This document shows, one piece after another, positions 1,900 to 56,446 of a stretch of 64,000 bases of DNA. Numbering within the stretch: the first letter of the stretch is position 1; every line of letters starts with the position of its first letter. The position numbers and the translations under genes are program-made. The stretch spans positions 162,699 to 226,698 of the IMG/VR virus record IMGVR_UViG_3300025098_000012; one strand, written 5' to 3'. Below the pieces are notes generated by a model. That model made no database searches and was not told the DNA's origin. It was given only the letters and a program-made list of their open reading frames with translations.

Positions 1900-2379
1900 T
1901 TAAATAACCTCTATCATCCAACCACGACCTAGACCGCCACCAAAAGATCCACGAGATGTCTGTAAGTAATCTTTGATAGCATACGCTATATCAACATCAC
2001 CCTCAAAGCGATCTTCCAAGTCATGAATACCTGCGTTCATATATATATCATCCATCTCAACGGGATGGCTTGCTTCTACTGCTAATGCAAAGTCAAAAAG
2101 ACTCACATTGCAAGACCAATGGTTATCTGGACAGATAAAGTTGATCTTTGATCTTTCTCCATTAGGGATGATGTTTACAACACATCGACCTGTTGCTTGG
2201 CTTTTGACCATTGAAAGTAGCTCTTGGACTGTCATCCTCTCCACTTCGTTTCTTGGTGATCCTGTAGAGATTGACACCTTGATCTTCGAGCTTGCTGTAC
2301 GATTTGAAGCTGTTTTGGACTCAAGTCGAGCAATCCTTTGCTCAAGGTCTTTGATGATTTCACTAGCAGATCTTCTCAT
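1900..2379 (-). CDS. MRRSASE-leader cassette protein (putative virion-internal cargo)
   Basis: ATG at 2379 after GGAG RBS; leader MRRSASEIIKDLEQRIARLESKTASNRTAS; unrelated C-terminal payload. Confidence 0.8.
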   Translation of the reverse strand: MRRSASEIIKDLEQRIARLESKTASNRTASSKIKVSISTGSPRNEVERMTVQELLSMVKSQATGRCVVNIIPNGERSKINFICPDNHWSCNVSLFDFALAVEASHPVEMDDIYMNAGIHDLEDRFEGDVDIAYAIKDYLQTSRGSFGGGLGRGWMIEVI

Positions 2380-2439
2380 GGTTTTTCTCCATTGGTTTAA
2401 GGTTAAAGAGATCACTTATGAGAGGGTATAAATAAACTA
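2358..2439 (-). repeat. 82-bp promoter-UTR-leader cassette, exact inverted copy of 56387-56468
   Basis: Base-by-base identity between the two loci; diverged copies at 5077-5165, 25199-25241, 42979-43036, 50040-50140 and, coding part only, 52613-52669 and 22925-22979. Confidence 0.95.
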
Positions 2440-4588: not shown

Positions 4589-4636
4589 GGTGTCTCTCCT
4601 TTATGGATAAAAGACACCGATAAAGAGACTATTAAT

Positions 4637-4688
4637 CCCTAGATACGAAAAACCCCCCCCAAAATCTCAAAGGGAGATGAGGTTCTTT
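4637..4688 (-). terminator. Rho-independent terminator, variant copy of the capsid terminator
   Basis: AAAGAACCTCATCT...GAGAT...GGGGTTTTT.GTATCTAGGG, homologous to 6501-6547. Confidence 0.65.
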
Positions 4689-4695
4689 ATAGACC

Positions 4696-5103
4696 CTACA
4701 GGCTGTTTTTTGCTCTGCGAATAACAGCAGGAGATGAAAGTCGATCACCCTTATTAGCACCCTCAATGATAGCAACCCAAGCCTCAACTGGAGAACTCGC
4801 TCTCAACTTCTTCTGTAAAGCCTCTCCCCACACTTGAATGTCCTGTTTAGTCATTTTTTGTGACTTCCAAGAGATCTTCTCTGATCCACCTCTAGTGTAT
4901 TCTAGCGTCATGGTAAACATAGCAATACCATTATCATCTTCAACTGTAGCTGAGTATCCTTCATCACTTTCTACAACACGACCCATAACGAGCGTAGAAA
5001 ATGCCTCCTCAGACCAAGAAAAAGCAAAAGGATTTGCTTGCTTTTCAAGACGGGCGATTCTCATCTCAAGATTTCTGATTACTTCACTAGCTGATCTTCT
5101 CAT
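4696..5103 (-). CDS. MRRSASE-leader cassette protein
   Basis: Leader MRRSASEVIRNLEMRIARLEKQA; cassette UTR and late motif at 5104-5165. Confidence 0.8.
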   Translation of the reverse strand: MRRSASEVIRNLEMRIARLEKQANPFAFSWSEEAFSTLVMGRVVESDEGYSATVEDDNGIAMFTMTLEYTRGGSEKISWKSQKMTKQDIQVWGEALQKKLRASSPVEAWVAIIEGANKGDRLSSPAVIRRAKNSL

Positions 5104-5170
5104 GTTTTTTCTCCATTGGTTTTTGGTTAATGAGATCACCTATGTGAAGATATAAATAAACTATTGAAAT

Positions 5171-5196
5171 CCCTAGATACAAAAAAACCCCATCTC
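5171..5196. repeat. 26-bp direct repeat (half terminator) identical to 6501-6526
   Basis: CCCTAGATACAAAAAAACCCCATCTC at both sites, flanking the LAGLIDADG gene and a membrane gene. Confidence 0.9.
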
Positions 5197-6605: not shown

Positions 6606-7484
6606 TTAACGCTGTACAGTAAGACGAGCAAGACCACGAGGGTTGTAAGCTCCGATACCCAAGTTTTCAAAGACACTGAAGCCGATTGTACGAGCTTTAG
6701 GATCGTCAGCAGAAAGGACGGTCAACTCGGTACGAACAGGGATACGACCAAACATCTCTGGCTCACAGCAGACATAAACAGTTCCAACAGGAACAAGTCG
6801 GCTAGTGATGATCTGAGCACCCCAAAGGGTAGCCTGTAGACCAGTCTTGAGAAGTGCCGCTTGGCTCTCGATGTCGAGAATGTCACGACCGAACTTACGG
6901 ATGTCAGCGTAATCACGAGCATTCATGAATACACGAGCAACACGAAGGTCATGACGCTCAATGAGGCTGTATGCGTCAGCAAGAACAGCACCATTAAGAG
7001 GAGCGATAACAGGAATGTCAGCGTTAGTCTGACCTGCAACGCTATCAAATCCGTTAGCCGCAACTGCATCAAGGATAGCGAATACACGCTCGTCCTCAGC
7101 CGCTTGGATTTGAGCACGAGCAAGATCCTGAGCACGCTCGATAAGGTCGAACCTACGCTCTTTGATCTGTGTGAGTGGGATCTCTGGGTTAGAAGCGATC
7201 TCAAACAATGGGAAGATAACCCTGCGTGGCTTGGTGATAGCAAGGATGTTCTCACCCTCTTCACCAACTACGAAAGCAGTCACATCGGGATCTTTGTCGT
7301 AGATAGGTAAAGCACCATCTGGAAGTTGCTCGACTAAGAAAGTCTTACGACCAACAGAGGTGTAATCTCTACGAAGGCGAAGTGGTTGAGTCATTGAAGC
7401 GGCGAGCTTCGCACGACCCTGTGGAGTCTTAATGTAGTCAGAAATGATCTTCTGTTTTACGGCATTATCAACTGTATTACTCAT
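6606..7484 (-). CDS. Major capsid protein (HK97 fold)
   Basis: 292 aa; HK97-like pattern (VVGEEGE, FEIASNPEI, MNARDYADI, LWGAQIITS, ENLGIGAYNP); lies after protease, scaffold and decoration genes. Confidence 0.85.
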   Translation of the reverse strand: MSNTVDNAVKQKIISDYIKTPQGRAKLAASMTQPLRLRRDYTSVGRKTFLVEQLPDGALPIYDKDPDVTAFVVGEEGENILAITKPRRVIFPLFEIASNPEIPLTQIKERRFDLIERAQDLARAQIQAAEDERVFAILDAVAANGFDSVAGQTNADIPVIAPLNGAVLADAYSLIERHDLRVARVFMNARDYADIRKFGRDILDIESQAALLKTGLQATLWGAQIITSRLVPVGTVYVCCEPEMFGRIPVRTELTVLSADDPKARTIGFSVFENLGIGAYNPRGLARLTVQR

Positions 7485-8245: not shown

Positions 8246-9814
8246 TTATCCGAAGAACTTGCTTACATCGGGAGCAGACTCCCAAAGTTTAGAAAGCTCA
8301 TCAGAAGCACTTGAAGCCTCACGAGAGATGTTACCGAGAGTCTTAACAGCCGCTTTACGAGCAGAGGTGCGTGGGCGATAAGAAGCCTTCTTATCAGCCT
8401 TTTCCTCTTTAGCCTCTTCCTCAGTAGCTTCTTCTTCGGTAGCTTCTTCTTCGGTAGCTTCTTCCTCAGTAGCTTCTTCCTCAGTAGCTTCTTCGGTAGA
8501 CTCTTCCTCAGCGTCTTCATCAGCCGCTGTGAAGATTGAAGCGAGGCGAGGGTCCATAGCCATTGCATCTTCTGCGTCCATGTCAAGACCCATGACATCT
8601 TCACCCATGCTCATTGTAGTTTCGACTTCTTCAGCAGTATATCCATACTCTGGATCATTCTGCTCACGAGTGTCATCTGCTTCAAGCTCTGCAAGGAGAG
8701 TTGCCATCTCATTATCAGCAGTAGTGTCCATGTCAGACATATAAGTTGAAAGAGCTTCTGCAAGACGCTCAATCTTTGCTAAACGCTGAGTAGGCTGACC
8801 CTCTGAAGGCTCACTAGCAGGAGCAGTCTCAAGTGCTACAGTGTCGTTCTGACCTTGATAGCCTGTACCAACTTGTACTGCGTTATCAGCGAGTTTACGA
8901 ACCTTGCGAGCAAGACGAGCATTAGCGGCTTTAAGAGTAGCGATTTCTTCTGCGAGAGCTTCGGCTGATGAAGAGTGATCCTCAGCCATCATCATAGCCT
9001 CGTGATCTTCAGCCATCAACATTGCTTCGTGATCTTCAGCTTCAAGATCAGCCATGATTTGTGAAAGCTCATCTTCTGCTTCAAGTTCGTCTGCGAAAGA
9101 CTCACCAAGACCAAGAGCGATTTCATCACGAGAAAGGAAGCCATCCTCATTCATATCAAGATCGTCAAAGATCTCGTCAGAGCCACCCCATTCGTCCATA
9201 GAAATCATGCCATCGCCATCGGTGTCATAAGCGTCAAACATAGAGTGACCCATGTGATCGTCAGCTTCTAGTTCATCACTTGCATTTCCTGGTCCTGTGA
9301 ATTCAAGACCTTCATCATACTCAGTTCCAACTTGTACAGCATTGTCAGCAAGACGAGCAACACGAGCATTAACAGTACGACTAGGAAGATCCATCATGCG
9401 AAGTGCAAGATCCTCGATCTCACGCTGTGAAGCAGTACGACCAAGACGACTTTCAGCGATGCGAATGCACTTAGCCGCTTTACGCTCCATAGCTTTTTTA
9501 AGGTTCTCTTGGCGAAGGTCATCAGTAAGAGCATAATCTTCAACAAGCTCATCGCTTACAGCAGGATGCTCTGGCTCCCAACCATAAGATGCAGGAGCAG
9601 GACCAGAACGGTAAGGTCCTTTACGGACTCCTTCACCGAACTCTGAGTCGAAGCCATACTGATCTACAGAAGGCTGATCGGATGAAGCAGGGTGACCGAA
9701 GTGATCCCAACCAAGATTATCGTATCCTGGGAGGCCAGAGTTTGCTCTGCGATTTCTTCTACGAGCAAGCTCTGCCCTGCGAGACATATTCTTAGAACGA
9801 GAATACCTAGACAT
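8246..9814 (-). CDS. Probable capsid scaffolding protein with an EF-hand pair
   Basis: Very acidic, coiled-coil-like, between protease and capsid genes; DTDGDGMISMDE and DMNEDGFLSRDE loops. Confidence 0.65.
   Translation of the reverse strand: MSRYSRSKNMSRRAELARRRNRRANSGLPGYDNLGWDHFGHPASSDQPSVDQYGFDSEFGEGVRKGPYRSGPAPASYGWEPEHPAVSDELVEDYALTDDLRQENLKKAMERKAAKCIRIAESRLGRTASQREIEDLALRMMDLPSRTVNARVARLADNAVQVGTEYDEGLEFTGPGNASDELEADDHMGHSMFDAYDTDGDGMISMDEWGGSDEIFDDLDMNEDGFLSRDEIALGLGESFADELEAEDELSQIMADLEAEDHEAMLMAEDHEAMMMAEDHSSSAEALAEEIATLKAANARLARKVRKLADNAVQVGTGYQGQNDTVALETAPASEPSEGQPTQRLAKIERLAEALSTYMSDMDTTADNEMATLLAELEADDTREQNDPEYGYTAEEVETTMSMGEDVMGLDMDAEDAMAMDPRLASIFTAADEDAEEESTEEATEEEATEEEATEEEATEEEATEEEAKEEKADKKASYRPRTSARKAAVKTLGNISREASSASDELSKLWESAPDVSKFFG
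8410..8510 (-). repeat. In-frame 15-bp tandem repeat encoding (EEEAT)n
   Basis: Repeated tcagtagcttcttc/tcggtagcttcttc units. Confidence 0.9.
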
Positions 9815-9852: not shown

Positions 9853-11292
9853 TTATTTCTGCCCGTAAGTGTTAAGGGATAAGAGTTTAGCTAATCTTAC
9901 AAGACGAAGAGTGTCTTGCTTCGACAGATTTTTACCATTTAAGTAGCTTGCTTGCTCCAGATAATCAACTACATCATTATACTGACTGGTTGAGCCGAGC
10001 AAACTAGCTAACTTATAAACATGGGTAGGAATCTGAACATTACAGTGATTATTCACTAGAGTTATGTTCAGTACAGCTTCTTCAACAGACTTAGCTGTTC
10101 TAACAGAAGCATCTAAGAGGCTCATGTACTTGGAAGCAGACATACCCTCTTTGACAATCGTATCGTTTTGTTCAACGACAGACTTATCAATAGGTGGGTT
10201 CATTACTTCTTGAGCCTTCTCTGCTTTGAGTTCGTTTTCTAGCTTTTGGCGAAAACGATCTACAATAGCAGTCTCGTAAACATTTTCGAGCTGTTTCAAC
10301 AAAGACTCGGAAGGTGCGTCAGCTTTATCATCACCACCTTCATCCTCATCCATGTCAAAAGGTCCAGCTTTCTTGTTTAGCTGACCATGAGGGTCATACC
10401 AAGGAGAACTCTGTAAACTAGACGCTTTAGCAATCCACTTCTGTGGAACTTCATTAAGTTGATCATCAGAAGCTGATTTAGCCATGTCAGCTTTAGGGAT
10501 GTCTAATACATTGCGAGCGACAGCTCCTACAAATGCAGGGGTTGCAACCCAAGATGCTTCGATGAATGTAACACCTGCTGTACCACCGATTTCTTCATGA
10601 CCACAAAGCTCTGCTACTCTATGTTGATTTCCTTGTTCATCATAGAAAACATTGCCTTTCTCATATTTGATATGAGAACACATCTCGGTTTCATCAGCGG
10701 CCACATGACCACATTTGGTGCAAATGGTAAAGTCTACGCTACATCCCATAGACATTGAGTTCATTTGACCCGACTCAATCTGTTTAACCAAGTCTTTGTG
10801 TTTGCGATCAGTAGCGACAAGGATGTCTACATATAAAGAATCACCGATGTCTCTAAGAACAGCATCAATGATCCGACCCTTAGATAGTTCTTCAACTTGG
10901 ATATGCTCAACAAAGTTATGAGCACCAATGAAGGTCTGATAAGATTTCTTAATCACACCTCTTGACCATGAGTCGAGGTTGTTATTGATGAACTTATCAG
11001 TGCCAGAGCTGACACGATAGTCAGCGTATTTACGATTAATAGTTTGTCCACCCTCAGTGATCGAGCCTGTCTTTGTGTTTGGAGGTGTGATTGCATCGAC
11101 AGAGCAAACGATAGTGGAGTGGGTAAGTAGAAATCTATCGGGAGTGAAAGGTTCGCCTAAGATGTCCTCTGCTTGCTTTTTGAGCGAAGCATTGATGGTT
11201 TTAGCACCAGAAGCGATCCTTACCTTATCCCATTGTAGACCATGAATGGAGGGCTGAACTACATTAGCCCTAGCATATCTTAAAAATGCCAT
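9853..11292 (-). CDS. Prohead (capsid maturation) serine protease with Cys/His insertion
   Basis: TFIGAHNFVEH, KGRIIDA, SMSMGC followed by CTKC-x-CSH, FIEASWVATPAF; head-operon position. Confidence 0.7.
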   Translation of the reverse strand: MAFLRYARANVVQPSIHGLQWDKVRIASGAKTINASLKKQAEDILGEPFTPDRFLLTHSTIVCSVDAITPPNTKTGSITEGGQTINRKYADYRVSSGTDKFINNNLDSWSRGVIKKSYQTFIGAHNFVEHIQVEELSKGRIIDAVLRDIGDSLYVDILVATDRKHKDLVKQIESGQMNSMSMGCSVDFTICTKCGHVAADETEMCSHIKYEKGNVFYDEQGNQHRVAELCGHEEIGGTAGVTFIEASWVATPAFVGAVARNVLDIPKADMAKSASDDQLNEVPQKWIAKASSLQSSPWYDPHGQLNKKAGPFDMDEDEGGDDKADAPSESLLKQLENVYETAIVDRFRQKLENELKAEKAQEVMNPPIDKSVVEQNDTIVKEGMSASKYMSLLDASVRTAKSVEEAVLNITLVNNHCNVQIPTHVYKLASLLGSTSQYNDVVDYLEQASYLNGKNLSKQDTLRLVRLAKLLSLNTYGQK

Positions 11293-21241: not shown

Positions 21242-22722
21242 GAATCGAAACAGACTTTAAACTCGACTTTAAAGATGTGTTGTTTAAGCCTAAGAGGTCT
21301 ACCCTCACATCACGCAAAGATGTGAAACTATCTAGGGAGATTAAACTCCCTCACAGTAAAAGAATATGGGAGGGTGTACCTATAGTAGCCGCTAATATGG
21401 ACACCGTAGCTACCTTTGAAGCAGGTAAAGTCCTCACCGACCTCCACATGATGGTCTGTCTCCATAAGCATTACACCGAAGAACGATACATGGAGATATA
21501 TGATTGGGTGTATTCCAATCAAGGATGTGGCTACGCTCCATATTGGGCTTACTCTATGGGTATCTCAGACGAAGAATTTGATAGACTTGTGCGTATTCAA
21601 GATAAGACCAATGGAATGATCCTCACGATCTGCATTGATGTGGCTAATGGGTATACAGAGCGTTTCATTGAGTTTGTCGCTAAGGTAAGGAAAAAGTATC
21701 CACTCTCCATCATCATCGCAGGGAATGTAGTCACAGCAGAAATCACTGAACAGTTGATCTTAGCAGGTGCTGACATCGTAAAGGTTGGGATTGGTTCGGG
21801 ATGCTTCGTTGCTGGTACACCTATCCTCACCAATAATGGACTCAAGGCGATTGAGGAAGTTGAGGTAGGAGATAAAGTAATGACTCACATGGGTCGTGAG
21901 CGTACTGTGTCGAACACCTTCACCCATACCGATAAGAATCTACTCGTTAATGTGAATGGTATCAAAGCGACACCAAACCATGAGTTCTATGTGGTACATA
22001 AGTCTGATGCAGATAAGGTGAATGACGAGAACATCCATGAGTACGCAAAGTGGGTTCGAGCTGATGAACTGACCTATTCACATTATCTTTTAGAAGCACC
22101 CTCATTTAGTCTCATAGAAATCAATACCCTAGAAACAGAACCTAACCCATCGGGGATCGCCTATGACCTTGAGGTCGAGGAAGATCACTCATATACGATT
22201 GGGGAGAATAGGACTGTAGTTCATAACTCAGCGTGTACGACCAGAATACAGGCAGGTGTAGGTTATCCACAGTTAAGTGCTGTTATTGAGTGTGCTGATG
22301 CCGCTCATGGTTTAGGTGGACGCATCATGTCAGATGGTGGTTGTACCTGTCCTGGTGATGTAGCTAAGGCATTTGGTGGTGGAGCTGACTATGTGATGCT
22401 TGGGGGTATGCTCGCAGGACACACCGAGAACCTTAGACTTGATGAAGATGGAAACGCACTCTTCTATGGTATGTCATCAGACACAGCCATGAACAAGTAT
22501 CATGGTGGTGTTAATGACTATCGTTCGTCAGAAGGACGCACAGTAGCCATTGAGCGTAAAGGTTCAATCAAAGATACCCTCCAAGACATACTTGGAGGCA
22601 TCCGATCAACCTGTACTTATATTGGTGCAAGCGAGCTAAGAGAACTGAGTAAATGCACGACATTCATTCGTGTTCGTCAGCAATATAACTCTGTGTTTGA
22701 GTCTAGGACGCTTAAGTCTTAG
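21238..22722 (+). CDS. guaC: GMP reductase (type 1) containing an intein
   Basis: [44 protein letters not shown]|[45 protein letters not shown]. Confidence 0.9.
21802..22227 (+). mobile_element. Mini-intein (142 aa, no endonuclease)
   Basis: Starts [10 protein letters not shown]; block B ATPNHEF; [11 protein letters not shown]; ends VVHN before Ser+1. Confidence 0.92.
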
Positions 22723-22985
22723 TAAGCACCTGCGATGTGCTTGATTTCTTCTTCAACCCTCATGGAGAGCGTATACCAACGCTCTGCTAAGTCAGCATAG
22801 TAGCGATCCTCCACATCTCCTCTGAATGAAGGCATCTTTTCAAGTTCACGCTCCATCTCTTGCATAGCCTTTAAGACTTTTTCTGCCGACTTACGAATCG
22901 GTGTTGAAGATTGCTTCTGTTCAAGTCTAGCAATCCTAGACTCAAGATTTCTTATCGTTTCTTCCGCTGTTCTTCTCATGTTCAT
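22719..22985 (-). CDS. MRRxA-leader protein
   Basis: [26 protein letters not shown]; ATGA-coupled to the SOD stop. Confidence 0.7.
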
Positions 22986-24223: not shown

Positions 24224-25198
24224 ATGATAAAGCTACTATGGAGAACCGATGTCCACATGGGGGATAAAACACCACGCAGACGCACAGGGAACTGGACGGA
24301 TGATGTGGTCAACAAGCTCAAGTGGATTGGTGATCTCGCTAAAGATAAAGAGATTGATGCTGTTCTTGATGGAGGAGACTTCTTTGATGTCAAATCACCT
24401 ACCAAGAATAGCCATAGTTTAGTCCGTAAAGCGTGTGAAGCACATGAGCATTACCCTTGCCCTACTTATGGTCTAGTCGGCAACCACGATGTAAAATATG
24501 GGAACATAGACTACCTACCCGAACAGCCTCTAGGTGTCCTATTCTCATCGGGTGTGTTCAAGCAGTTTGGGGATGATGTAGAAATCAACTTTGAAAAAGA
24601 TGGTGTCAAAGTTCGTGTCGTGGGTGTGCCTTATCATGGTGTCATCTATGACTTTGATCGGCTCAAAAACATAAAGAAGAAAGATGAAGACTACCTGTTA
24701 GTAGCTTGCCACTTGTTAGCCCGACAAGGTAAGACAGGATCTATGTTTGAGAATGAGGATATAATCGGATATGACTTCCTCAACGAAAACACAGAGGTTG
24801 ACGGTTGGTTCTTTGGTCATTGGCACAAAGACCAAGGGATCTCCACGCTCTTAAATGGAGCGAGGGTAGTCAATGTAGGGTCATTAACTAGAGGCTCTTT
24901 GCACCTTGATGACTTAGACCGTAGACCTTGTGTGGTAGAGGTTCAAGCGACCAAAGAGTCGCTTAACTTCATCAGACACGATGTTCCTGTACGAGATGCC
25001 AATGAGGTATTCAAAATAGAGGAAACAGTGCGTGAGAAGGAAGATAAGCAACGCATGGAGGACATCGTAGACAAGATGAAAGCTGTAGCCACATCGGGTT
25101 GGTCTGAACTGACTCTTAAAGAGCGTGTAATGCAGACTATGGGTTCAAATGGAGCTAAGGAGATGGCTATCTCTTACCTTGAACGAGTCGAGGAATAA
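24224..25198 (+). CDS. SbcD/Mre11-like metallophosphoesterase nuclease
   Basis: DVH, GGDFFD, GNHD, HLLA, GHWH motifs. Confidence 0.82.
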   Translation: MIKLLWRTDVHMGDKTPRRRTGNWTDDVVNKLKWIGDLAKDKEIDAVLDGGDFFDVKSPTKNSHSLVRKACEAHEHYPCPTYGLVGNHDVKYGNIDYLPEQPLGVLFSSGVFKQFGDDVEINFEKDGVKVRVVGVPYHGVIYDFDRLKNIKKKDEDYLLVACHLLARQGKTGSMFENEDIIGYDFLNENTEVDGWFFGHWHKDQGISTLLNGARVVNVGSLTRGSLHLDDLDRRPCVVEVQATKESLNFIRHDVPVRDANEVFKIEETVREKEDKQRMEDIVDKMKAVATSGWSELTLKERVMQTMGSNGAKEMAISYLERVEE

Positions 25199-25239
25199 GA
25201 TTAAAGAGATCACTTATGAGGGGGGGTGTAAATAAACTA

Positions 25240-26097
25240 TTAATAGCGATCTTTATCAATAGCGTCTTGGTCAATCTCAACAAAGATACCGTACTCTACC
25301 TCAGCCAAAACATGAGCGATGATATGTCTATCGTCCTTAATCTCTAAACCTCTGACCATGTAGTCATGCTCAAGGATCTCAATGTGAGTGAGGTTGTGAT
25401 ACTCTGGTATATCGTATTCGACCTCATGCTGTACATCACCAAAAGCGAGATTAAGCTGATCGTCATCCATATTCCTAAGAATGTTGCCCTTGATGTTCTT
25501 GGTGATAGCATCACAAAGATTTCTTACTGAACTCGGATCATCATCGAGGTACATATCAGCAAGGTTCATATCAGCAAGGTTCTCAAGCTCGTCTAGCTCA
25601 ACCTCAATAGCCATCTTAACAAGAAGACCTGTAGTACCCTCAATAGAATCATTTTCGGGGTAATTTGGACTGCTTGGGTGAAGCGAAGAAGGAACTTCCA
25701 CCTCGATCTCGCCCTTAACTTTTTTGAGTTCCATTTTGAGTACATCACCATCTACTATTAAAGAAGAGAGAGCGTGTAAAAACTTGTTTGCTTCCTTTTT
25801 GCTTGTGCCTGGAAGCAATGTTTGAACTGCTTGTAGTCCTGTACCTGCGAGTTTATTTCGTGCAGTACGACTAGTAATCCTGTCTGCATCCCGATCAGAG
25901 AGATACATATCTGCATCCCGATCATAATACTTTCCCTCACTAGGGTCATAATAAAGGATCTCCCCTCCTTTAAACTGAAATGGACCTTCCATTCCCTTTA
26001 ATGGGGTGTAGCGATCTTGGTCAAGGCGAGGCATACGGAACTTTCCCATCATTTCTTCGTGGTGTCTTTTAGCTGACGCTTTTCTAATTGAAGCCAT
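25240..26097 (-). CDS. Two-module late protein
   Basis: EGPFQFKGGEILYYDPSEGKYYDRDADMYL module, then RTARNKLAG boundary and an acidic module; late motif at 26141. Confidence 0.7.
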   Translation of the reverse strand: MASIRKASAKRHHEEMMGKFRMPRLDQDRYTPLKGMEGPFQFKGGEILYYDPSEGKYYDRDADMYLSDRDADRITSRTARNKLAGTGLQAVQTLLPGTSKKEANKFLHALSSLIVDGDVLKMELKKVKGEIEVEVPSSLHPSSPNYPENDSIEGTTGLLVKMAIEVELDELENLADMNLADMYLDDDPSSVRNLCDAITKNIKGNILRNMDDDQLNLAFGDVQHEVEYDIPEYHNLTHIEILEHDYMVRGLEIKDDRHIIAHVLAEVEYGIFVEIDQDAIDKDRY

Positions 26098-26172
26098 AAT
26101 ACACTTCCTTTCTAATTTTCCTGTTCATAACTTGGTATCAATAAATAAACTATTAAAGAAAGGACTTTGAAA

Positions 26173-42878: not shown

Positions 42879-43035
42879 GACAAAGTAATCTTCTCTTTGG
42901 CTGTAACCAAGATAACACTCTTGAGTCCAGTTTATCTCAAGATCGTTATTAAAATTGAGATCAGATTTTTAAAGAAATCATATCCATTTGGTTTAAGGTT
43001 AATGTGATCACTTATGTGGGTTCATAAAGAAACTA

Positions 43036-44799
43036 TCAGCCTTGACAGCTCATACATTCATCAAGATCATAATCTTTTAATGCCTTACGCTCAATCTTCT
43101 CACTCACTTTATCGGCTACAACACCAGCGTTGGTGCGAAGATAGTACAAGCCCTTGAGCTTCTTCTTCCATGCACTCAAATGAACAGCGTTGACATAGTT
43201 CTTATCTGAACCAGCAGGGAAGAATAAGTTGACCGACTGACCTTGGCAAACCCACTCTTGACGAACGGAAGCGTGTTCCACAATCCACATTTGGTCGATC
43301 TCAAAAGCAGTCTTGAATGTGTCCTTTTCAATCTGAGTTAAGAAATCTAAGTGCTGTACGCTCCCTTGATTGAGGATGATACTCTGACGCACTTCATCGA
43401 GATCAATGTCCTCTTTCTTCTCAAGCACAGCTTCAAGATACTTATTGAACTGCAAAAACGACCCTGCTCGTGTCCTATGCGTAAACGCATTTGACTTCCA
43501 AGGTTCGATACTTGGGCTTGTATCGAGAATGATAGCCGAGTTAGCGTTTGGGGCGATGGCGAGAAGATGGCTATTCCTCATGCCCGATCCGATACCGTCA
43601 AGGTACTCACCCTTGATTTCTGCTAAACGCTTAGAGGAAGCTACTGCTCGTTCTTTGATGGTTGAGTAAATCTTACGGTTAGCCGAGACAGCAAAGATCG
43701 ACTCAAAGGGCAGACCCTTTTTTTGAAGATAGGCATGAAAACCCATTGTACCTAAACCAAGAGAGCGTTCGGCTTCTGCACTCTTGATCGCCTTCTCAAG
43801 TTGAGGGGGAGCGTTTTCAATGAAATACTGTAGGACATCATCTAAGAACTCGATCAAGTCCTCAACGATGGGGGTATCTTTCCATTCATCGAACATTTCA
43901 ACATTGAGACTAGATAGACAACAGACTGCCGAGCGATTAGGACCTGTGGGAAGATGAATTTCATTACAGAGATTTGAGCCATGTATCTCCAACCCCTTAT
44001 CCTTGAGGGGCTGTGGGAGATGTCTATTGGCTTCATCAATAAAGTTGAGGTAAGGCTCTCCTGTACGGAAGCGTACTTCAAGGATGCGTTGCCATAGTTC
44101 ACGAGCATCTACGGTGTCTCTGACTGTATTATCGGCAGGGTCAATGAGATTCCAAGTTCCACCGCTCATCACAGCAGTCATAAACTCATCAGTAATGTTA
44201 AGGGCATTGTTAAGGTTGAAACACTTACGGTTAGTGTCTCCACCTGTAGGAAGTCGAAGGTTCATAAACTCAACGACATCGGGGTGGCTAATGTCGAGGT
44301 AAGCCGCATAACTACCTTTGCGTGTAGACCCTTGCCTATACGCAACCATATCCGAGTCTACGGTTTTGAGAAAAGGAATAGGTCCTGGTGCTTTTTTGCT
44401 AACTGAGCGAACATCATCCCAATGTCCACCGACACCCCCTCCCATAACGCTCATCCACCGAAGCTCCTCTGTGTGTTCGATCAGACCCTCAACTGTGTCG
44501 GGTACATAAGTGAGGAAGCAAGAAATCGGCATACCTGTACTCTCAGCGTTCGAGAGTATAGGTGAACTGAACATGAACCAACCTTTGGTTGCGTACTCTA
44601 ACACCCTCTCAGCAAGTTCTTTATTTGGGGTGTATGCGTAAGCGGCTCTCCTAAATGCTTCCTGTGGTGATCCGTCCGACTCTTTCATGTAATAAGAGTT
44701 CAATAGTGTCAATGCGTGGTCTGAAAAAGGGAATCCCATGCCTTTTCCTTTCATTTTTTCAATCGGTTTTTTCTCATAGTTGCACTTGAGTTCTCTCAA
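43036..44799 (-). CDS. nrdA: Ribonucleotide reductase class Ia alpha subunit
   Basis: PISCFL, GGGVG, GSNLCNEI, VCCLSSLN, APNANS, QGQSVN, LYYLR, C-terminal CMSCQG. Confidence 0.93.
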   Translation of the reverse strand: MRELKCNYEKKPIEKMKGKGMGFPFSDHALTLLNSYYMKESDGSPQEAFRRAAYAYTPNKELAERVLEYATKGWFMFSSPILSNAESTGMPISCFLTYVPDTVEGLIEHTEELRWMSVMGGGVGGHWDDVRSVSKKAPGPIPFLKTVDSDMVAYRQGSTRKGSYAAYLDISHPDVVEFMNLRLPTGGDTNRKCFNLNNALNITDEFMTAVMSGGTWNLIDPADNTVRDTVDARELWQRILEVRFRTGEPYLNFIDEANRHLPQPLKDKGLEIHGSNLCNEIHLPTGPNRSAVCCLSSLNVEMFDEWKDTPIVEDLIEFLDDVLQYFIENAPPQLEKAIKSAEAERSLGLGTMGFHAYLQKKGLPFESIFAVSANRKIYSTIKERAVASSKRLAEIKGEYLDGIGSGMRNSHLLAIAPNANSAIILDTSPSIEPWKSNAFTHRTRAGSFLQFNKYLEAVLEKKEDIDLDEVRQSIILNQGSVQHLDFLTQIEKDTFKTAFEIDQMWIVEHASVRQEWVCQGQSVNLFFPAGSDKNYVNAVHLSAWKKKLKGLYYLRTNAGVVADKVSEKIERKALKDYDLDECMSCQG

Positions 44800-49566: not shown

Positions 49567-49657
49567 AATCAGTCTCCTAGTGTGAATAAAGTGTCTGATT
49601 ATGTGGGCGATATAAAGAAACTATTAAAGTAGATCTCTACCTGTGGATCATAAACGA

Positions 49658-50074
49658 TTACTTAGCAGGGATTGAGTTTGGCAGATTAGTGATTGTTTCA
49701 CTAATCCAATCATGACCACTATCTAACAAGTCTTCACCCCAAAAGCTAGGGTCAGAGATTTTCACTGTAATGCAAATGCAAGATTCACATTCCGATGTAG
49801 TTACAAAATCTTCAATCATCTGACTGTGGGGCCACTGATTGATAGAGGTTTTAAAATCTTCTACAGATCTTTTTAGGATCGCCCTGTTCATGTGCATGAA
49901 ACAAAGGTTAATTTTGTCTTCTTCATACTCACGATCATCTACCATGATGATAGCACGAGCATTACTTAATTTTGCTGTCTTTGCGGCAGACTTCGTTCTT
50001 CTTGAGGTGCTGTTTTCAAGTCGAGCAATACGATCTTCAAGATTTCTGATGGTTTCGTTTGCTGATCTTCTCAT
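49658..50074 (-). CDS. MRRSA-leader cassette protein
   Basis: MRRSANETIRNLEDRIARLENSTSRRTKSAAKTA; cassette UTR at 50075-50140. Confidence 0.8.
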   Translation of the reverse strand: MRRSANETIRNLEDRIARLENSTSRRTKSAAKTAKLSNARAIIMVDDREYEEDKINLCFMHMNRAILKRSVEDFKTSINQWPHSQMIEDFVTTSECESCICITVKISDPSFWGEDLLDSGHDWISETITNLPNSIPAK

Positions 50075-50107
50075 AATGGTTCTCCATTTGGTTTAAGATT
50101 AAAGGGA

Positions 50108-50788
50108 TCACTTATTGATAGGGGGGATAAATAAACTATTAACACGCTCGTACTTGATGACCTCATCAACCAAACCAAGCTCAAGACACTTCTTAGGGTT
50201 CATCCAAAGATCACGCTTTAGAAGATCTTTGAGTTGCTTCTTCTTCATGTTGGTGTTCTTGAGGTAAATGGACTCCAACATTTCCATGAGCGAGTCCATA
50301 GACTCTTTCTCATCAGTTAGGTTCTCGTATGTTCCCCATACACCTGTGCTGATTTGGTGGATGAGCATGAAACTATGCTCGGTGATGAAGCGTTTAGTTC
50401 CGACACAAGACATGATAGTCGCCGCTGACGCCGCCGACCCCTCGACATAAGTGAAAACAGGGATGTCCGAGTCTAAGATATGGCTCGCCCCTGCAAGACC
50501 ACTAAAGGCACATCCTCCACCACTATTGATATGAAGGTGGATCGCAGGAGCTTGAGAGAGTCCAAGATCAGTGACCATATTAATGATCTGTTGACCGATG
50601 GACTTGATCGCAATCCCCATCTCCATGACAGACTTCGGAGAGATGCCTTGATAGAGGTAGATGTGATTGTCGCTTACGGTAATCTCACCATAGAAATCTG
50701 CTTGTGCGTTTTTGCGTTGAACATGAGCTTCTTCGTCATCATAAATTCTACGCATAGTGGGTGGGTGGTTAAAGTATTTCATAATCAT
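50108..50788 (-). CDS. clpP: ClpP-like (S14) serine protease
   Basis: LHINSGGG, VEGSAASAATII, FMLIHQ, RDLWMNPKKCLELGLVDEV. Confidence 0.8.
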   Translation of the reverse strand: MIMKYFNHPPTMRRIYDDEEAHVQRKNAQADFYGEITVSDNHIYLYQGISPKSVMEMGIAIKSIGQQIINMVTDLGLSQAPAIHLHINSGGGCAFSGLAGASHILDSDIPVFTYVEGSAASAATIMSCVGTKRFITEHSFMLIHQISTGVWGTYENLTDEKESMDSLMEMLESIYLKNTNMKKKQLKDLLKRDLWMNPKKCLELGLVDEVIKYERVNSLFIPPINK

Positions 50789-51207
50789 GCCCTTTCTCGG
50801 ATTATGTGAAATCCTTCTAGCCAAGCTAGAACAAGAGGTCTAAGAGATTGAGTGGCGAGTGGGGAAAAACACTCTGGCATTTTCCGATGTCCTAAGATAC
50901 AGTGGTCTTTCTTATACGACAGACAATGGTCTTTTTCATCACAGTCTTTGGGTACATCAAGGAGCTTTAGACAGCCTCTAGGCTCTCTAAGGTTTTGATT
51001 CATCAGAGGGGTTGTGAACCCTCTCATTGCTTGGTCGAGTATGTCATGTGAGACTTCGGGGATTAAACGCTCTACAGGTGTTCCTACAAGGTCAGAGAAC
51101 GCACCCCAATTTGTACTCTCATAAGGAAGGATCTTAGCGATCTTAGGGTTATTCCAATGACGATCAGTAAGGGTCATAAAGATTAACCCATCTCTACGGT
51201 ACATCAT
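50785..51207 (-). CDS. Hypothetical Cys-containing protein
   Basis: 140-aa ORF coupled to neighbours. Confidence 0.6.
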   Translation of the reverse strand: MMYRRDGLIFMTLTDRHWNNPKIAKILPYESTNWGAFSDLVGTPVERLIPEVSHDILDQAMRGFTTPLMNQNLREPRGCLKLLDVPKDCDEKDHCLSYKKDHCILGHRKMPECFSPLATQSLRPLVLAWLEGFHIIRERA

Positions 51208-51575: not shown

Positions 51576-51860
51576 TTAATGTTGTCTATGCAGACATCTC
51601 GCCCTAACCTCATTGAGCATAGATTCGATCTTATTAAACTTATCTAAAAATTCTTTATAGGGTCGAAGCACATCTTCATCACTGAGGTTATCGAGCATTT
51701 CAGCGGCATCATCAAAGATTCTTTTAAGATCACGATTTTCACTTAGAAAGTCATGGTTTTCATACTTTTTTCTAAGGTCTACGAGCCTACCTAGATTGTC
51801 ATCTAGGTTTTCTCTCACATCGTGAAACATCTTGGTTTTAGAGACTGCGTTTCTTACCAA
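51576..51860 (-). CDS. Hypothetical protein
   Basis: ORF overlapping the upstream stop; start uncertain. Confidence 0.55.
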   Translation of the reverse strand: MVRNAVSKTKMFHDVRENLDDNLGRLVDLRKKYENHDFLSENRDLKRIFDDAAEMLDNLSDEDVLRPYKEFLDKFNKIESMLNEVRARCLHRQH

Positions 51861-53584
51861 CTTTTTTTTTGATAAGAAGCTCTTCTACGACCACCACTCA
51901 TAGCACCCTCAAGTTTACGGATGAGTTTCTGTAGACCTGCAATGGCTTTACGAGTACGAACTTCAACAGGCTGACGACCTGCACGACCAGTTCCTTGAAT
52001 ACGATCAAGTGCGAGGCGAATGTCGTTCGCAGACTCTTGGGAAAGTTGATCTCGATTAGTGCCGAGTGAACGCTGTGTTGCCATGAGCTGTTGTACAGCT
52101 CGCTCATCAACGATACCGTTATCTTGGAATGAAGCAATCGCCGCACGAACAACAGAAACGGTATCTGTGATCATAGCTTGTGAGTAAGCAATGTCTTGGT
52201 TCTGCCACATTCCAGGATTTGAAGTAAGACCGATTGGATACGAGCCATAGAGAGGACCGCTCTTACGGTGTTCACCTCTCTGTGAATATGCAGAGACATA
52301 ACCCTTCTTGAGCTTAGACTTGAGCTGTTTAACAAAGAAAGCCTGTGCTTCATAAGAGTCCATAAATGATTTATCGGCTCTACGACCCGAAGAACCAAGA
52401 CGACCATAAAGGATTTCTACATCTGATCCGCTAACGACCATCTCGTAGAATTTGCTTTTGTTCTCGGACTCACCGATGAGATAAAGCATACAAGAGGTAG
52501 CCTCTGCCATTGAGCGACCCTCATGATAAGCTGTGCTTGAGCGAACACCTGCGAGTTGTGGCTCACCTGCGGCTTCACGATTCATGCTTGCAGTGCGATT
52601 GAGGTTTGCCTCAAGACGAGCGATCCTCATCTCAAGGTTACGGATTACTTCACTAGCTGATCTTCTCATTTGAGATCCTTTCTTTAGAAGCCTTCTGACT
52701 TCATCTTTAGAGTAAGAGTTGTCGAGCTTACGCTCATTACGATAGATGAGGTGACGCAAACGCTTACGCTCCTCATCATTGAGTGAATCAATGCCTCTAC
52801 GCTGACCTTTATTGATAAGCATAAAGTCATCACGCTCAAGATAGGCATTGGATTTAAGGTCTGCAAGTAGCTTAGATGCTGGAGATGACTGACTAGCAAT
52901 GATTTCTTCAACCACATTCATCTGTCTTTCAGAGAGCTGAATACGATCTTCAGCTTTAGACTTGAGTTGTGCCAAGAAACGATTACGAGGGTCGAGTTCA
53001 AGTGCCTTTTCAATACGGACAAGCTGATTACTTGTCTGATTACCAACCATTTGAGTTTGCATCAGTTTTTCGTCAAGCACTTCAATCTGTCTCTCGGAAA
53101 GCTCTCTACCACCCATAAACTGATCGTAGAGACTTCTGAAAAAACGATTAGTAGGTTGCATCGCAATCGCTTGGTTGAGCTTCGTTAAGATGTCTTGATC
53201 GGGATTCTCAATACGCTCTTCAGTTTCGATTAGGATTTCCTCAACCCTGTAGTGAAGGGGATCTCCTTGTTGAAGCTCATTTAAGATGTCTTTCCACCAA
53301 TCACTATTCGGATTAAGAGCAAGAACTGCTTGAACACGCTCAATGCTCTCTACATCTCTGAACTTACCTGGAAAGTCGATCTTGAGTTGGATGAGTCCAT
53401 CACTGATGGACATATCTCCAAGACTCCTTAACAGAGACACAAGAACATCTGGTCCTTTTTTGTTGAGTTTAACTTCAAAATCGTCAAAGTTAATCATGGC
53501 ATTGTCTCTACGAGACTCCATCTCAAGCATCTCTAGTGCTTCTTCTACTGTGGTATTGTAGAAATATATTTGATTGGCTTTCAT
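51854..53584 (-). CDS. Multidomain late protein: helical repeats + internal MRRSASE leader + WGR domain
   Basis: LSERQ repeats; MRRSASEVIRNLEMRIARLE; SKFYEMVVSGSDVEILYGRLGSSG...QLKSKLKKGY; late motif at 53623. Confidence 0.75.
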   Translation of the reverse strand: MKANQIYFYNTTVEEALEMLEMESRRDNAMINFDDFEVKLNKKGPDVLVSLLRSLGDMSISDGLIQLKIDFPGKFRDVESIERVQAVLALNPNSDWWKDILNELQQGDPLHYRVEEILIETEERIENPDQDILTKLNQAIAMQPTNRFFRSLYDQFMGGRELSERQIEVLDEKLMQTQMVGNQTSNQLVRIEKALELDPRNRFLAQLKSKAEDRIQLSERQMNVVEEIIASQSSPASKLLADLKSNAYLERDDFMLINKGQRRGIDSLNDEERKRLRHLIYRNERKLDNSYSKDEVRRLLKKGSQMRRSASEVIRNLEMRIARLEANLNRTASMNREAAGEPQLAGVRSSTAYHEGRSMAEATSCMLYLIGESENKSKFYEMVVSGSDVEILYGRLGSSGRRADKSFMDSYEAQAFFVKQLKSKLKKGYVSAYSQRGEHRKSGPLYGSYPIGLTSNPGMWQNQDIAYSQAMITDTVSVVRAAIASFQDNGIVDERAVQQLMATQRSLGTNRDQLSQESANDIRLALDRIQGTGRAGRQPVEVRTRKAIAGLQKLIRKLEGAMSGGRRRASYQKKSW

Positions 53585-54483: not shown

Positions 54484-54750
54484 ATGTCATTACCTAGAGA
54501 ACGAAAAAGAGCTGACTATCGAGTCATTGCTCGCATCTTGCAACTGAGTCATGGACAAGCAGATCCAAAAGACTCATTGCTTGAAAAGATTTCTAATGTA
54601 TTTAATCGTAATGGTGGCTCTTGGGTATTATTCTTTGAAGGACACCCAAAACACAGCAAGCTACTTAAAGTAGTGATAAAAGCTGTCGTAAAACATAAGA
54701 AGGATCAACATGAGCGAAGAACTAGAAGCCAAATCAGTTGGGAAGATTAA
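54484..54750 (+). CDS. Late hypothetical protein
   Basis: Late motif at 54438; GGGGG RBS. Confidence 0.6.
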   Translation: MSLPRERKRADYRVIARILQLSHGQADPKDSLLEKISNVFNRNGGSWVLFFEGHPKHSKLLKVVIKAVVKHKKDQHERRTRSQISWED

Positions 54751-56386: not shown

Positions 56387-56446
56387 TAGTTTATTTATAC
56401 CCTCTCATAAGTGATCTCTTTAACCTTAAACCAATGGAGAAAAACC

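What the first reader, a model, noticed from the sequence alone, without database searches (positions are those of the whole stretch)
2358..2439. Mobile promoter-UTR-leader cassette fused to unrelated payloads: a candidate plug-and-play capsid-loading system
Seen: the 82 bp at 2358-2439 (minus) are identical to 56387-56468 (plus). They comprise the late motif, a ~50-nt UTR, a GGAG RBS and the start of MRRSASE. Diverged copies drive genes 4696-5103 and 49658-50074, and the leader alone occurs in 22719-22985 and inside 51854-53584. All encode MRR[ST]A[SNE]E-I--LE-RIARLE followed by a basic-x-Ala site (KTAS, KQA, RTAS, KTA) and then completely different C-termini. Established: T4 internal proteins use a short cleavable N-terminal capsid-targeting sequence. 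Inference: this phage spreads a ready-made cassette that gives any captured ORF late expression plus a head-packaging signal.
Basis: partly seen in the sequence, partly recalled or inferred. Interest (0 to 1): 0.92.

Follow-up and report, generated by a model that had tools for sequence, protein, structure and literature searches.

The report
Shared leader tag on swappable phage genes
An uncultured marine giant phage and its relatives put the same promoter, untranslated leader and 24-residue peptide in front of hundreds of unrelated small genes and swap these genes by recombination; the peptide looks like a cleavable capsid-loading tag, but this has not been shown.

Summary
Window 2358-2439(-) and 56387-56468(+) are 82/82 identical. 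Six window genes carry the peptide MRR[ST]A[SNE]E.I[RK][ND]LE.RIARLE, and conservation runs on to residue 24 ([KR]-[QSK]-[AS]-[SGA]).

The window is the end of a 226-kb uncultured marine phage contig, distantly related to Bacillus phage G. An HMM of the leader finds 1067 protein clusters (50% identity) among 1.84 billion. In the 150 I inspected, nearly all matches start at residue 1. Their payloads fall into 115 BLAST groups, and only one carries a solid Pfam domain (WGR).

Comparison with close relatives shows whole-gene gain or loss and payload replacement:
- Gene D is bounded by direct repeats of the promoter motif.
- Gene B is an exact promoter-to-stop insertion after the portal gene.
- A relative keeps B's cassette and leader but has a different payload.

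Capsid loading is not shown. The supporting evidence is indirect:
- Codon usage shows selection on the peptide itself.
- The peptide forms a two-heptad amphipathic helix followed by a disordered linker.
- The motif [RK]-x-A-S is enriched and conserved in the scaffold-like protein and the prohead-protease linker.
- The leader also occurs inside polyprotein-like ORFs.

The "late" promoter label is unsupported. I read this as a new variant of the T4 internal-protein/PeSL theme.

The parts
2380..2439 (-). Cassette of gene A: promoter-like motif TAGTTTATTTATA, conserved 5'UTR (CATAAGTGATCTCTTTAACCTTAAACCAATGGAGAA), SD
   Evidence: Identical to the gene B cassette. The same consensus occurs upstream of about 30 leader genes on other contigs.
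1900..2379 (-). Leader gene A, 159 aa (leader codons 2308-2379)
   Evidence: Translation. All 12 relatives carry the leader. AF2 model: helix 5-25, linker 26-32 with pLDDT below 50 at 26-28, globular domain 33-158. No PDB fold match.
56387..56446 (+). Cassette of gene B, starting directly after the portal stop codon
56447..56740 (+). Leader gene B, 97 aa (leader 56447-56518). The unit from about 56387 to 56740 (promoter to stop codon) is present or absent as a whole among relatives.
   Evidence: Absent from L066, whose portal is 99% identical, with junctions TAA|TAG... and ...TAA|GAGG. L067/68/69/95 keep the cassette and leader but carry a different 109-aa payload.
5104..5163 (-). Cassette of gene C (82-85% identical to that of A)
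4696..5103 (-). Leader gene C, 135 aa (leader 5032-5103), in the variable region downstream of the capsid gene
4653..4676 (-). Terminator-like stem-loop after gene C, followed by the next promoter motif at 4631
   Evidence: Similar stem-loop plus T-run elements lie just upstream of several cassettes in other loci.
50075..50138 (-). Cassette of gene D (left promoter repeat)
49658..50074 (-). Leader gene D, 138 aa (leader 50003-50074)
   Evidence: About 498 nt are absent from L066 and L067.
49612..49626 (-). Right-hand direct repeat of the promoter motif (TAATAGTTTCTTTAT) bounding the D unit; it also drives 49036-49566
   Evidence: L066 has a single promoter copy at this position and no D.
22719..22979 (-). 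Leader gene E, 86 aa (leader 22908-22979), with no promoter/UTR cassette. Its start overlaps the end of a Fe/Mn superoxide dismutase gene.
   Evidence: The same C-terminal domain is fused, through an internal leader, behind a protein with a HAD-type DxDGT motif in L004 and behind another domain in P0004.
51854..53584 (-). Gene F, 576 aa: N-terminal part of about 305 aa, internal leader (52598-52669), then a WGR-domain part of 271 aa
   Evidence: WGR PF05406, E 4e-13. The in-frame arrangement and internal leader are conserved in L066 and L067.
42985..43039 (-). Solo cassette: promoter motif plus UTR with a degraded SD and a 6-codon ORF, no leader
   Evidence: (I4, D4).
25195..25241 (-). Truncated solo cassette: promoter motif plus the first two thirds of the UTR, running into a convergent gene
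   Evidence: (D4).
8246..9814 (-). Acidic scaffold-like protein, 522 aa. It carries four [RK]-x-A-S sites; RLG[RK]xAS and KKAS (KKAA in one ortholog) are kept across ten diverged orthologs.
   Evidence: EF-hand loop.
9853..11292 (-). Prohead (head maturation) protease, 479 aa. K-x-A-S / K-x-A-G sites lie in the disordered linker after the catalytic part.
   Evidence: phrog_18299 and phrog_2774. Relatives annotated as head or capsid maturation protease. Linker sites are conserved in orthologs. Motif enrichment.
6606..7484 (-). HK97-fold major capsid protein, 292 aa, 96-100% conserved among the closer relatives (86% in the most distant locus, L143). Its operon uses the same promoter motif (at 8226).
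54710..56386 (+). Portal protein; gene B sits directly after it
50108..50824 (-). Second protease, ClpP-related and of the head-maturation type, directly upstream of gene D
   Evidence: phrog_94, PF00574, NF045542 at 102 bits, below its cut-off of 120.

Best explanation
The 82-bp repeat is one copy pair of a composite cassette. Each cassette holds a phage promoter motif (often after a terminator-like stem-loop), a conserved 5'UTR of about 45 nt with a strong SD, and 24 codons for a leader peptide. The cassette heads a very large family of small, mostly orphan genes in a clade of uncultured marine giant phages. SHOWN: cassette genes are gained, lost and exchanged between close relatives as discrete units. 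Crossovers fall in the repeated promoter motif (whole-gene gain or loss) or at the end of the leader codons (payload replacement). Truncated solo cassettes are left behind. This works like the PeSL-mediated modular shuffling of T4-type phages. SHOWN: the peptide itself is under selection, independently of the DNA cassette. INFERRED: the peptide is a propeptide-like docking and processing module. Residues 7-20 form a two-heptad amphipathic helix (a/d positions I9, L12, I16, L19) that binds the scaffold or core of the assembling procapsid. The flanking basic-x-Ala-Ser motifs (residues 3-6 and 21-24, the latter at the end of the helix, before the disordered linker) are then cut by a head-maturation protease, freeing the payload inside the head for delivery with the DNA. 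This parallels the T4 capsid-targeting sequence and internal proteins. Internal copies would act as polyprotein linkers.
For: Genetics:
- 64 loci on many viral contigs match the leader DNA pattern.
- There are 54 unique leader proteins whose payloads fall into 47 BLAST groups.
- The leader HMM finds 1067 representative proteins at E<=1e-3. In the top 150, nearly all matches start at residue 1, the payloads form 115 groups of 143, and only one has a solid Pfam domain, WGR.
- The promoter-UTR consensus is conserved across contigs.
- The D unit is flanked by promoter repeats and is absent from a relative that has one repeat.
- The B unit is an exact promoter-to-stop insertion, and its payload is replaced in another relative.
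- The slot after the capsid gene holds 1-3 leader genes with different payloads in 9 of the 10 relatives inspected, including some with diverged leader variants.
- Solo relics occur in the window.

Peptide function:
- Invariant residues are encoded by many codons: Ser6 by TCA/AGT/AGC, Arg15 and Arg18 by six codons each.
- The leader occurs without the cassette in E and F.
- Nine of 150 proteins carry internal or C-terminal copies, mostly the half unit R[IV]ARLE[KR]x[AS]S between domains. One such protein was seen on 12 independent TARA contigs.
- The AF2 model of A shows a leader helix, a disordered linker near the KTAS/RTAS sites, then a confident globular domain.
- [RK]-x-A-S occurs 34 times against 10.9 expected across 67 ORFs. 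The scaffold-like protein (4 vs 0.5), leader protein A (3 vs 0.12) and the protease (3 vs 0.33) rank 1st, 2nd and 4th of 67 (they are the top three with the looser [RK]-x-A-[SG]). The motif is absent from the capsid and portal proteins.
- These sites keep the basic residue and Ala-Ser while the middle residue varies in diverged orthologs.
- The capsid operon uses the same promoter motif.
Against: - There are no virion, N-terminal or expression data for any member, because the clade has no cultured representative.
- The cleavage motif was defined after looking at the leaders, and the scissile bond is unknown.
- Glu-type motifs of known giant-phage proteases are not enriched in the scaffold-like protein or the protease.
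- The protease could not be modelled (mean pLDDT 42), and a second, ClpP-related protease exists, so the processing enzyme is unassigned.
- Profile comparison of the leader with the scaffold-like protein is not significant (probability 4.7%).
- At least four of the genome's ten leader genes lie among non-structural genes such as PhoH, a DNA methyltransferase, a Sir2-like gene and thymidylate kinase.
- The promoter motif also drives metabolic genes, so co-expression with head genes is not established.
- A tag that works at internal and C-terminal positions differs from the strictly N-terminal T4 signal.
Confidence: 0.5

Rival explanations
1. The leader is a generic docking or oligomerisation helix for some destination other than the capsid interior. 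Candidates are a common socket on the capsid surface, tail or baseplate, a phage-made compartment, or a shared host target. The [RK]-x-A-S motifs would then be part of the binding interface, not cleavage sites.
For: The helix has a perfect two-heptad I/L core. RIARLE also appears in papers on the c-Jun leucine zipper, where by my recollection it opens the zipper. Leader genes are scattered through the genome, many away from head genes. The tag works at N-terminal, internal and C-terminal positions. Conserved N-terminal anchors with variable C-termini are typical of phage fibre and spike proteins (general knowledge).
Against: The payloads are small (median about 111 aa) and mostly globular orphans, not fibre-like. 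Two heptads are too short for a stable coiled coil alone. This reading does not explain the enrichment and conservation of the motif in the scaffold-like protein and the protease linker. It also does not explain the conserved slot beside the capsid gene.
Confidence: 0.2
2. The leader is a regulatory tag: a degron for timed proteolysis (the phage has a ClpP-related protease) or a phosphorylation or modification site (R-x-x-S). It would put a whole class of accessory proteins under one post-translational control, together with the shared 5'UTR.
For: A ClpP-related protease gene lies between F and D. The dedicated UTR suggests a co-regulated gene class. The basic-x-x-Ser pattern fits basophilic kinase sites (general knowledge).
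Against: The ClpP-like protein scores best against the head-maturation subtype, not ClpP proper. No kinase or unfoldase was seen in the window. Internal copies between domains, and conservation of the same motif in the scaffold-like protein, fit processing better than degradation.
Confidence: 0.12
3. The peptide has no function of its own. The first 72 nt of coding sequence are kept similar because they belong to the recombination and translation-initiation cassette, through gene conversion and optimised early codons.
For: A and B are 100% identical over 82 nt while orthologous slots in relatives carry different cassette variants, which indicates recent conversion or transfer within the genome. 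Codons 1-3 are almost invariant at the DNA level, though this is partly forced by my search pattern.
Against: Invariant residues use up to six synonymous codons, including both serine codon families. The leader occurs without the cassette and inside ORFs, and that arrangement is conserved across three genomes. The HMM hits are defined at the protein level.
Confidence: 0.06
4. The payloads are one fast-evolving homologous family, so nothing is 'captured': the conserved N-terminus is simply the slowest-evolving part.
For: Nearly all payloads are orphans without detectable domains. BLAST cannot see remote homology. All detected relatives of A carry the leader.
Against: Protein lengths in the top 150 range from 43 to 419 aa. 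The payloads form 115 BLAST groups of 143. One payload is a WGR domain, known outside this family. In L004 the leader plus E-like domain sits behind a protein with a HAD-type motif. Conservation stops abruptly at residue 24. Relatives with 97% identical portal proteins carry unalignable payloads at the same site.
Confidence: 0.07

Closest known systems
T4 capsid-targeting sequence (CTS) and the internal proteins of T-even phages
   Same: A short conserved terminal peptide is shared by otherwise unrelated small proteins. The genes are highly variable between close relatives and sit in plastic loci flanked by regulatory repeats. In T4 the peptide binds the scaffolding core, is cut off by the prohead protease, and suffices to load foreign proteins (PMC3012670, PMC9026906, PMC2839356).
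   Different: PHROGs and Pfam give no hit for the leader proteins (the T4 signal itself was not compared directly). The leader is 24 residues, not 10. It is helical and heptad-like, flanked by basic-x-Ala-Ser rather than a Glu site, and also used internally and C-terminally. Genes are dispersed over the genome instead of sitting in two loci. There are over 1000 clusters against about 30 variants. The phage lineage differs: small HK97-type capsid protein, distant relatives of phage G. Packaging has not been demonstrated.
PeSLs (promoter-early stem-loop cassettes) of T4-type phages
   Same: Repeated composite intergenic elements of promoter, SD and often a terminator stem-loop bound orphan genes in hyperplastic regions. 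Indels and replacements between close relatives have their junctions in these elements (PMC2839356, PMC4122927; here).
   Different: The promoter motif is not sigma-70-like. A conserved 5'UTR is added. The homology continues 72 nt into the coding region and encodes a selected peptide. Mini-circle intermediates have not been tested.
Propeptides of phiKZ/SPN3US-type giant phage head and ejection proteins
   Same: Giant phages load many extra proteins into the head. N-terminal propeptides, sometimes with several sites, are removed by the prohead protease, which also cuts its own C-terminal part. Head paralog families vary in number (PMC5694885, PMC10052503).
   Different: Those proteins are cut at S/A/G-x-E or A-x-E and belong to a few homologous paralog families. 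Here one peptide heads many unrelated payloads. Glu-type motifs are not enriched in the scaffold-like protein or the protease, although A5-S6-E7 in the leader fits that motif.
Encapsulin cargo-loading peptides (general knowledge, not tested here)
   Same: A short conserved terminal peptide on diverse cargo proteins docks to the inner face of an HK97-fold shell.
   Different: Encapsulin peptides are usually C-terminal and not cleaved, and belong to bacterial compartments, not virions. No sequence relation was examined.

Membership tests
T4 CTS / internal proteins | Short terminal peptide shared by small proteins that are otherwise unrelated | tested here: met
   54 unique proteins form 47 payload groups. 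1067 HMM hits; the top 150 form 115 groups. Conservation ends at residue 24.
T4 CTS / internal proteins | Peptide removed by the prohead protease at that protease's cleavage motif | tested here: inconclusive
   The candidate motif [RK]-x-A-S is shared with the scaffold-like protein and the protease linker, and is enriched and conserved there. The motif was defined post hoc and no cleavage data exist. T4-type [LI]-x-E is not enriched in those proteins.
T4 CTS / internal proteins | Proteins present inside virions and delivered to the host | not testable with these tools
   There is no cultured member: no match in GenBank phages or in 185,579 species genomes.
T4 CTS / internal proteins | Homology to T4 internal proteins and a T4-type head module | tested here: not met
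   PHROGs and Pfam give no hit for A-D. The portal and protease relatives are an uncultured 485-kb phage, Tunturi_5, Bacillus phage G and actinophages. The capsid protein is a 292-aa HK97-type protein.
PeSL-type mobile regulatory cassettes | Repeated composite intergenic element (promoter, SD, terminator stem-loop) next to orphan genes in variable regions | tested here: met
   Met by sequence only. The promoter-UTR-SD consensus occurs in about 30 cassettes. Terminator-like stem-loops lie after C and before several cassettes. Promoter activity was not tested.
PeSL-type mobile regulatory cassettes | Indels or replacements between close relatives with junctions inside the element | tested here: met
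   The D unit lies between two promoter repeats where L066 has one. The B unit is an exact insertion. Payload replacement starts at the end of the leader. The capsid-downstream region has a variable cassette count.
PeSL-type mobile regulatory cassettes | Sigma-70-like early promoter; element ends before the start codon | tested here: not met
   No sigma-70-type sites coincide with the cassettes. The motif is TAGTTT(A/C)TTTAT. Homology extends 72 nt into the ORF.
PeSL-type mobile regulatory cassettes | Excised mini-circles during infection | not testable with these tools
   This requires infected cells.
phiKZ/SPN3US-type propeptides | Cleavage after Glu in S/A/G-x-E by a gp21-like protease | tested here: inconclusive
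   A5-S6-E7 is nearly invariant in the leader. However, [SAG]-x-E is not enriched in the scaffold-like protein or the protease, and the protease fold could not be modelled.

The most novel reading that the evidence does not exclude
The 24-residue leader is a universal, transferable capsid-loading and processing tag of a widespread clade of marine giant phages. If so, the 1000-plus unrelated leader-bearing protein clusters are virion-packaged proteins injected with the DNA. That would be by far the largest repertoire of phage internal or ejected proteins known. It would be renewed by promoter- and leader-mediated cassette exchange, with internal copies acting as polyprotein linkers.
Probability: 0.4. 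Interest if true: 0.85.

Novelty: new variant of a known kind. Interest (0 to 1): 0.72.

Why it matters
If the leader loads proteins into the head, it marks from sequence alone a very large, fast-turning set of candidate injected proteins in abundant uncultured ocean phages. Such proteins could act in host takeover or counter-defence, and until now could not be told apart from other orphan genes. It would also show that the 'targeting peptide plus recombinogenic regulatory cassette' arrangement known from T-even phages arose independently in an unrelated giant-phage lineage with an HK97-type capsid. It would provide a compact tag for loading cargo into such capsids. Even without the capsid reading, the data give a clear case of cassette-based gene exchange in giant phages whose recombination substrate extends into the coding sequence.

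Tried and rejected
- Megablast of 25 kb of the window against GenBank phages found nothing.
- tblastn of the 24-aa consensus against GenBank phages found nothing.
- The leader DNA pattern has no match in 185,579 species genomes.
- Pfam on the six window proteins, the 54 locus proteins and 150 representatives gave only WGR as a solid hit.
- PHROGs gave no hit for A-D.
- Foldseek of the A model against the PDB had a best E of 0.23, so no fold assignment.
- Prohead protease: phmmer against PDB sequences found nothing, NCBIfam and Pfam found nothing, and the AF2 model was too poor to search.
- Homology of the leader to the scaffold-like protein was suggested by RTAS...RVARL. hhalign gave probability 4.7%, so I rejected it as unsupported.
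- Structured RNA in the UTR: alifold gave -0.6 kcal/mol and only a 4-bp anti-SD pairing, and Rfam found nothing.
- Glu-type cleavage motifs are not enriched in the scaffold-like protein or the protease.
- A PurZ (2-aminoadenine) reading of 26167-27366 was suggested by PHROGs. I rejected it because the protein scores as PurA above cut-off and far below the PurZ cut-off.
- The 'late promoter' label was rejected as unproven.
Full report
**1. The observation.** The reverse complement of window 2358-2439 is identical to 56387-56468 at 82 of 82 positions. The identity ends sharply at both sides, and the next 60 nt (the rest of the leader codons and beyond) are only 33/60 identical. The repeat finder reports the pair as a 131-nt inverted repeat at 86%. 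It also reports diverged copies at 5044-5165 and 50015-50134, and shorter promoter/UTR-only copies at 42988-43039 and 25190-25237. A six-frame search finds exactly six copies of the peptide in the window:
- A: 1900-2379(-)
- B: 56447-56740(+)
- C: 4696-5103(-)
- D: 49658-50074(-)
- E: 22719-22979(-)
- an internal copy in F: 51854-53584(-), with its Met at 52669

**2. What the window is.** The window holds these genes:
- an HK97-fold major capsid protein (6606-7484)
- a head-maturation protease (9853-11292)
- an acidic scaffold-like protein with an EF-hand loop (8246-9814)
- a portal protein (54710-56386)
- a second, ClpP-related protease of the head-maturation type (50108-50824)
- helicases, both ribonucleotide reductase subunits, a clamp loader, PurA, a topoisomerase IB-like protein and a Fe/Mn superoxide dismutase

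It has no near match among 50,697 GenBank phage records. The closest protein relatives are an uncultured 485-kb phage (LR745208), Tunturiibacter phage Tunturi_5 and, distantly, Bacillus phage G. The window is the last 64 kb of IMG/VR contig 3300025098_000012, which is 226,698 bp long. Related contigs reach 618 kb. One family member lies on TARA Oceans scaffolds.

**3. The cassette is a family trait.** A degenerate DNA pattern for the leader finds 64 loci in IMG/VR. Translating these loci gives 99 leader ORFs, 54 of them unique. The parts after RIARLE fall into 47 BLASTP groups at E<1e-3. Upstream of about 30 of the 54 unique leader genes lies the same element:
- the motif TAGTTT(A/C)TTTAT(A)
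- about 8 variable nt
- CATAAGTGATCTCTTTAACCTTAAACCAAATGGAGAA
- 4-6 nt, then ATG

In several loci a terminator-like stem-loop with a T-run precedes the element. The same holds after gene C. The UTR shows no conserved RNA structure and no Rfam match, so it is conserved as primary sequence.

An HMM of the first 30 residues, run against 1.84 billion representative proteins, gives 1067 hits at E<=1e-3 and 108 at E<=1e-10. In the 150 best, the match starts at residue 1 in all but a handful. Protein lengths run from 43 to 419 aa, payloads form 115 groups of 143, and Pfam recognises only one solid domain, WGR. The window's genome has at least ten leader genes, and related contigs have 4-12.

**4. Gain, loss and exchange are directly visible.**
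- After the portal gene, the window has the cassette plus B.
- Contig 3300033182_000980 has a portal 99% identical in protein but nothing at that site. The difference is exactly the stretch from the promoter motif to B's stop codon, with TAA at both junctions.
- Four other contigs keep the cassette and leader at that site. They carry an unrelated 109-aa payload, and homology is lost right after the RIARLE codons and regained at the gene end.
- Gene D with one promoter copy (about 498 nt) is flanked in the window by direct repeats TAATAGTTT(A/C)TTTAT. The relative has a single copy and no D.
- Between the capsid gene and the clamp-loader gene, relatives whose capsid proteins are 96-100% identical to the window's carry one to three leader genes with different payloads. 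More distant relatives carry diverged leaders there, for example MRHLTASQKIAHLEHRLARLE.
- The window also holds two dead cassettes, and L001 holds a cassette cut off after six codons.
- A and B are 100% identical, while the orthologous portal slot in relatives carries a different cassette variant. This points to recent transfer or conversion within this genome.

This behaviour matches PeSL-mediated modular shuffling in T4-type phages, which was also noted for the T-even internal-protein loci (PMC2839356, PMC4122927).

**5. The peptide is selected as a peptide.** Invariant or near-invariant residues are M1, R2, R3, A5, S6, E7, I9, L12, E13, R15, A17, R18, L19 and E20. They are encoded by many codons: Ser6 by TCA, AGT and AGC, and Arg15 and Arg18 by six codons each. 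The leader also occurs without the DNA cassette in E and F. F's arrangement is an N-terminal part of about 305 aa, the leader, and a 271-aa WGR part. It is conserved in three genomes. Nine of the 150 representatives carry extra internal or C-terminal copies. These are mostly the half unit (M)R[IV]ARLE[KR]x[AS]S between two domains. One such protein was assembled on 12 independent contigs. The E-type C-terminal domain is found behind a protein with a HAD-type DxDGT motif (L004) and behind another domain (P0004), each time joined by a leader copy.

**6. What the peptide probably does.** Residues 7-20 form an amphipathic helix with I9, L12, I16 and L19 at heptad a/d positions. In the AF2 model of A (12-sequence alignment, pTM 0.71), the leader is a helix (residues 5-25). 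A low-confidence linker follows (26-32, pLDDT below 50 at 26-28), then a confident globular domain (33-158). The KTAS and RTAS sites lie at the end of the helix and in the linker.

The leader is bracketed by two copies of basic-x-Ala-Ser, at residues 3-6 and 21-24. In a shuffle test over 67 window ORFs, [RK]-x-A-S occurs 34 times against 10.9 expected. The scaffold-like protein (4 vs 0.5), leader protein A (3 vs 0.12) and the head protease (3 vs 0.33) rank 1st, 2nd and 4th; with the looser [RK]-x-A-[SG] they are the top three. The capsid and portal proteins have none. In orthologs at 37-90% identity, the scaffold site RLG[RK]xAS and the protease-linker site K-x-A-S keep the basic residue and Ala-Ser while the middle residue and the surroundings vary. 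The protease sites lie in a region predicted to lack structure, after the catalytic part.

This is the pattern expected of maturation cleavage sites. It suggests that the leader is a propeptide-like docking helix released by cleavage, as for the T4 capsid-targeting sequence (PMC9026906) and giant-phage propeptides (PMC5694885). These steps are inferred, not shown.

**7. Weaknesses.**
- The motif was defined after seeing the leaders.
- The scissile bond and the responsible protease (479-aa or ClpP-related) are unknown.
- The leader does not align significantly with the scaffold-like protein.
- Several leader genes lie among metabolic genes.
- The promoter motif also precedes the reductase small subunit, a topoisomerase IB-like gene and the superoxide dismutase operon. 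A second motif class, GTAACCCCTTAT(C/T)TAT, precedes a helicase and other genes. 'Late' timing therefore cannot be claimed.
- For the one payload family I searched (A's), no leaderless relatives were found, so 'capture of existing ORFs' is documented only for WGR and for the domain fusions.

**8. Comparison and verdict.** Functionally, the closest systems are the T4 capsid-targeting sequence with its variable internal proteins, and the PeSL cassettes. The present system is not a member of either by homology or by several defining features; see the membership table. It differs as follows:
- the length and nature of the peptide
- a dedicated UTR
- homology that crosses the start codon
- dispersal over the genome
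- internal use of the leader
- scale

The searchable literature holds no description of this leader. I rate it a new variant of a known kind. The genetics are well documented, and the capsid-loading function is plausible but untested.

Noticed in passing
window 5195-6148(-): A LAGLIDADG homing endonuclease with a C-terminal HTH sits directly downstream of the major capsid gene. It is conserved in most close relatives but absent in L145.
   Followed up: partly
window 8246-9814(-), repeat 8381-8527: The acidic scaffold-like protein carries a canonical EF-hand calcium-binding loop (PF13202, E 2e-9). It also has a 15-nt tandem repeat encoding (TEEEA)n whose length varies between relatives.
   Followed up: partly
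window 22982-23593(-): A phage-encoded Fe/Mn superoxide dismutase; its stop overlaps the start region of leader gene E.
   Followed up: partly
window 50108-50824(-): A second protease, ClpP-related, scores best against the head-maturation subtype (NF045542, 102 bits, below its cut-off). It lies between leader genes F and D, so the phage has two candidate maturation proteases.
   Followed up: partly
window 26167-27366(+): An adenylosuccinate synthase. PHROGs labels the family with a PurZ-like name, but NCBIfam scores it as PurA above cut-off and PurZ far below, so there is no evidence for 2-aminoadenine DNA.
   Followed up: yes
window 2829(-), 15262(+), 15609(+), 39116(-), 39823(+), 58187(-), 58470(-): A second conserved intergenic motif, GTAACCCCTTAT(C/T)TAT, precedes a helicase and several small genes. 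It may mark a different promoter class from TAGTTTATTTAT.
   Followed up: partly
window 58520-60382(+) and 60375-62336(+): Two adjacent large genes (620 and 653 aa) share internal DNA repeats (families D6, D9), so they are probably paralogs. They have no family hits.
   Followed up: no
window 18146-19579(+): A topoisomerase IB / tyrosine-recombinase-like protein, preceded by the same promoter-like motif as the cassettes.
   Followed up: no
window 4058-4588(-): A 176-aa protein with a Sec-type signal peptide is conserved inside the variable region between leader genes. Relatives have a further lipoprotein-like gene there.
   Followed up: no
window 39199-39753(-) and 49036-49566(-): Two further small proteins are enriched in the [RK]-x-A-S motif; the first starts MNYNRMIRRVAS. 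Both are driven by the promoter motif and may be additional processed proteins.
   Followed up: no
L001 about 5055-5110: An orphan cassette holds the UTR, ATG and six leader codons, then runs straight into the promoter of the next cassette. This looks like the footprint of a payload deletion.
   Followed up: partly
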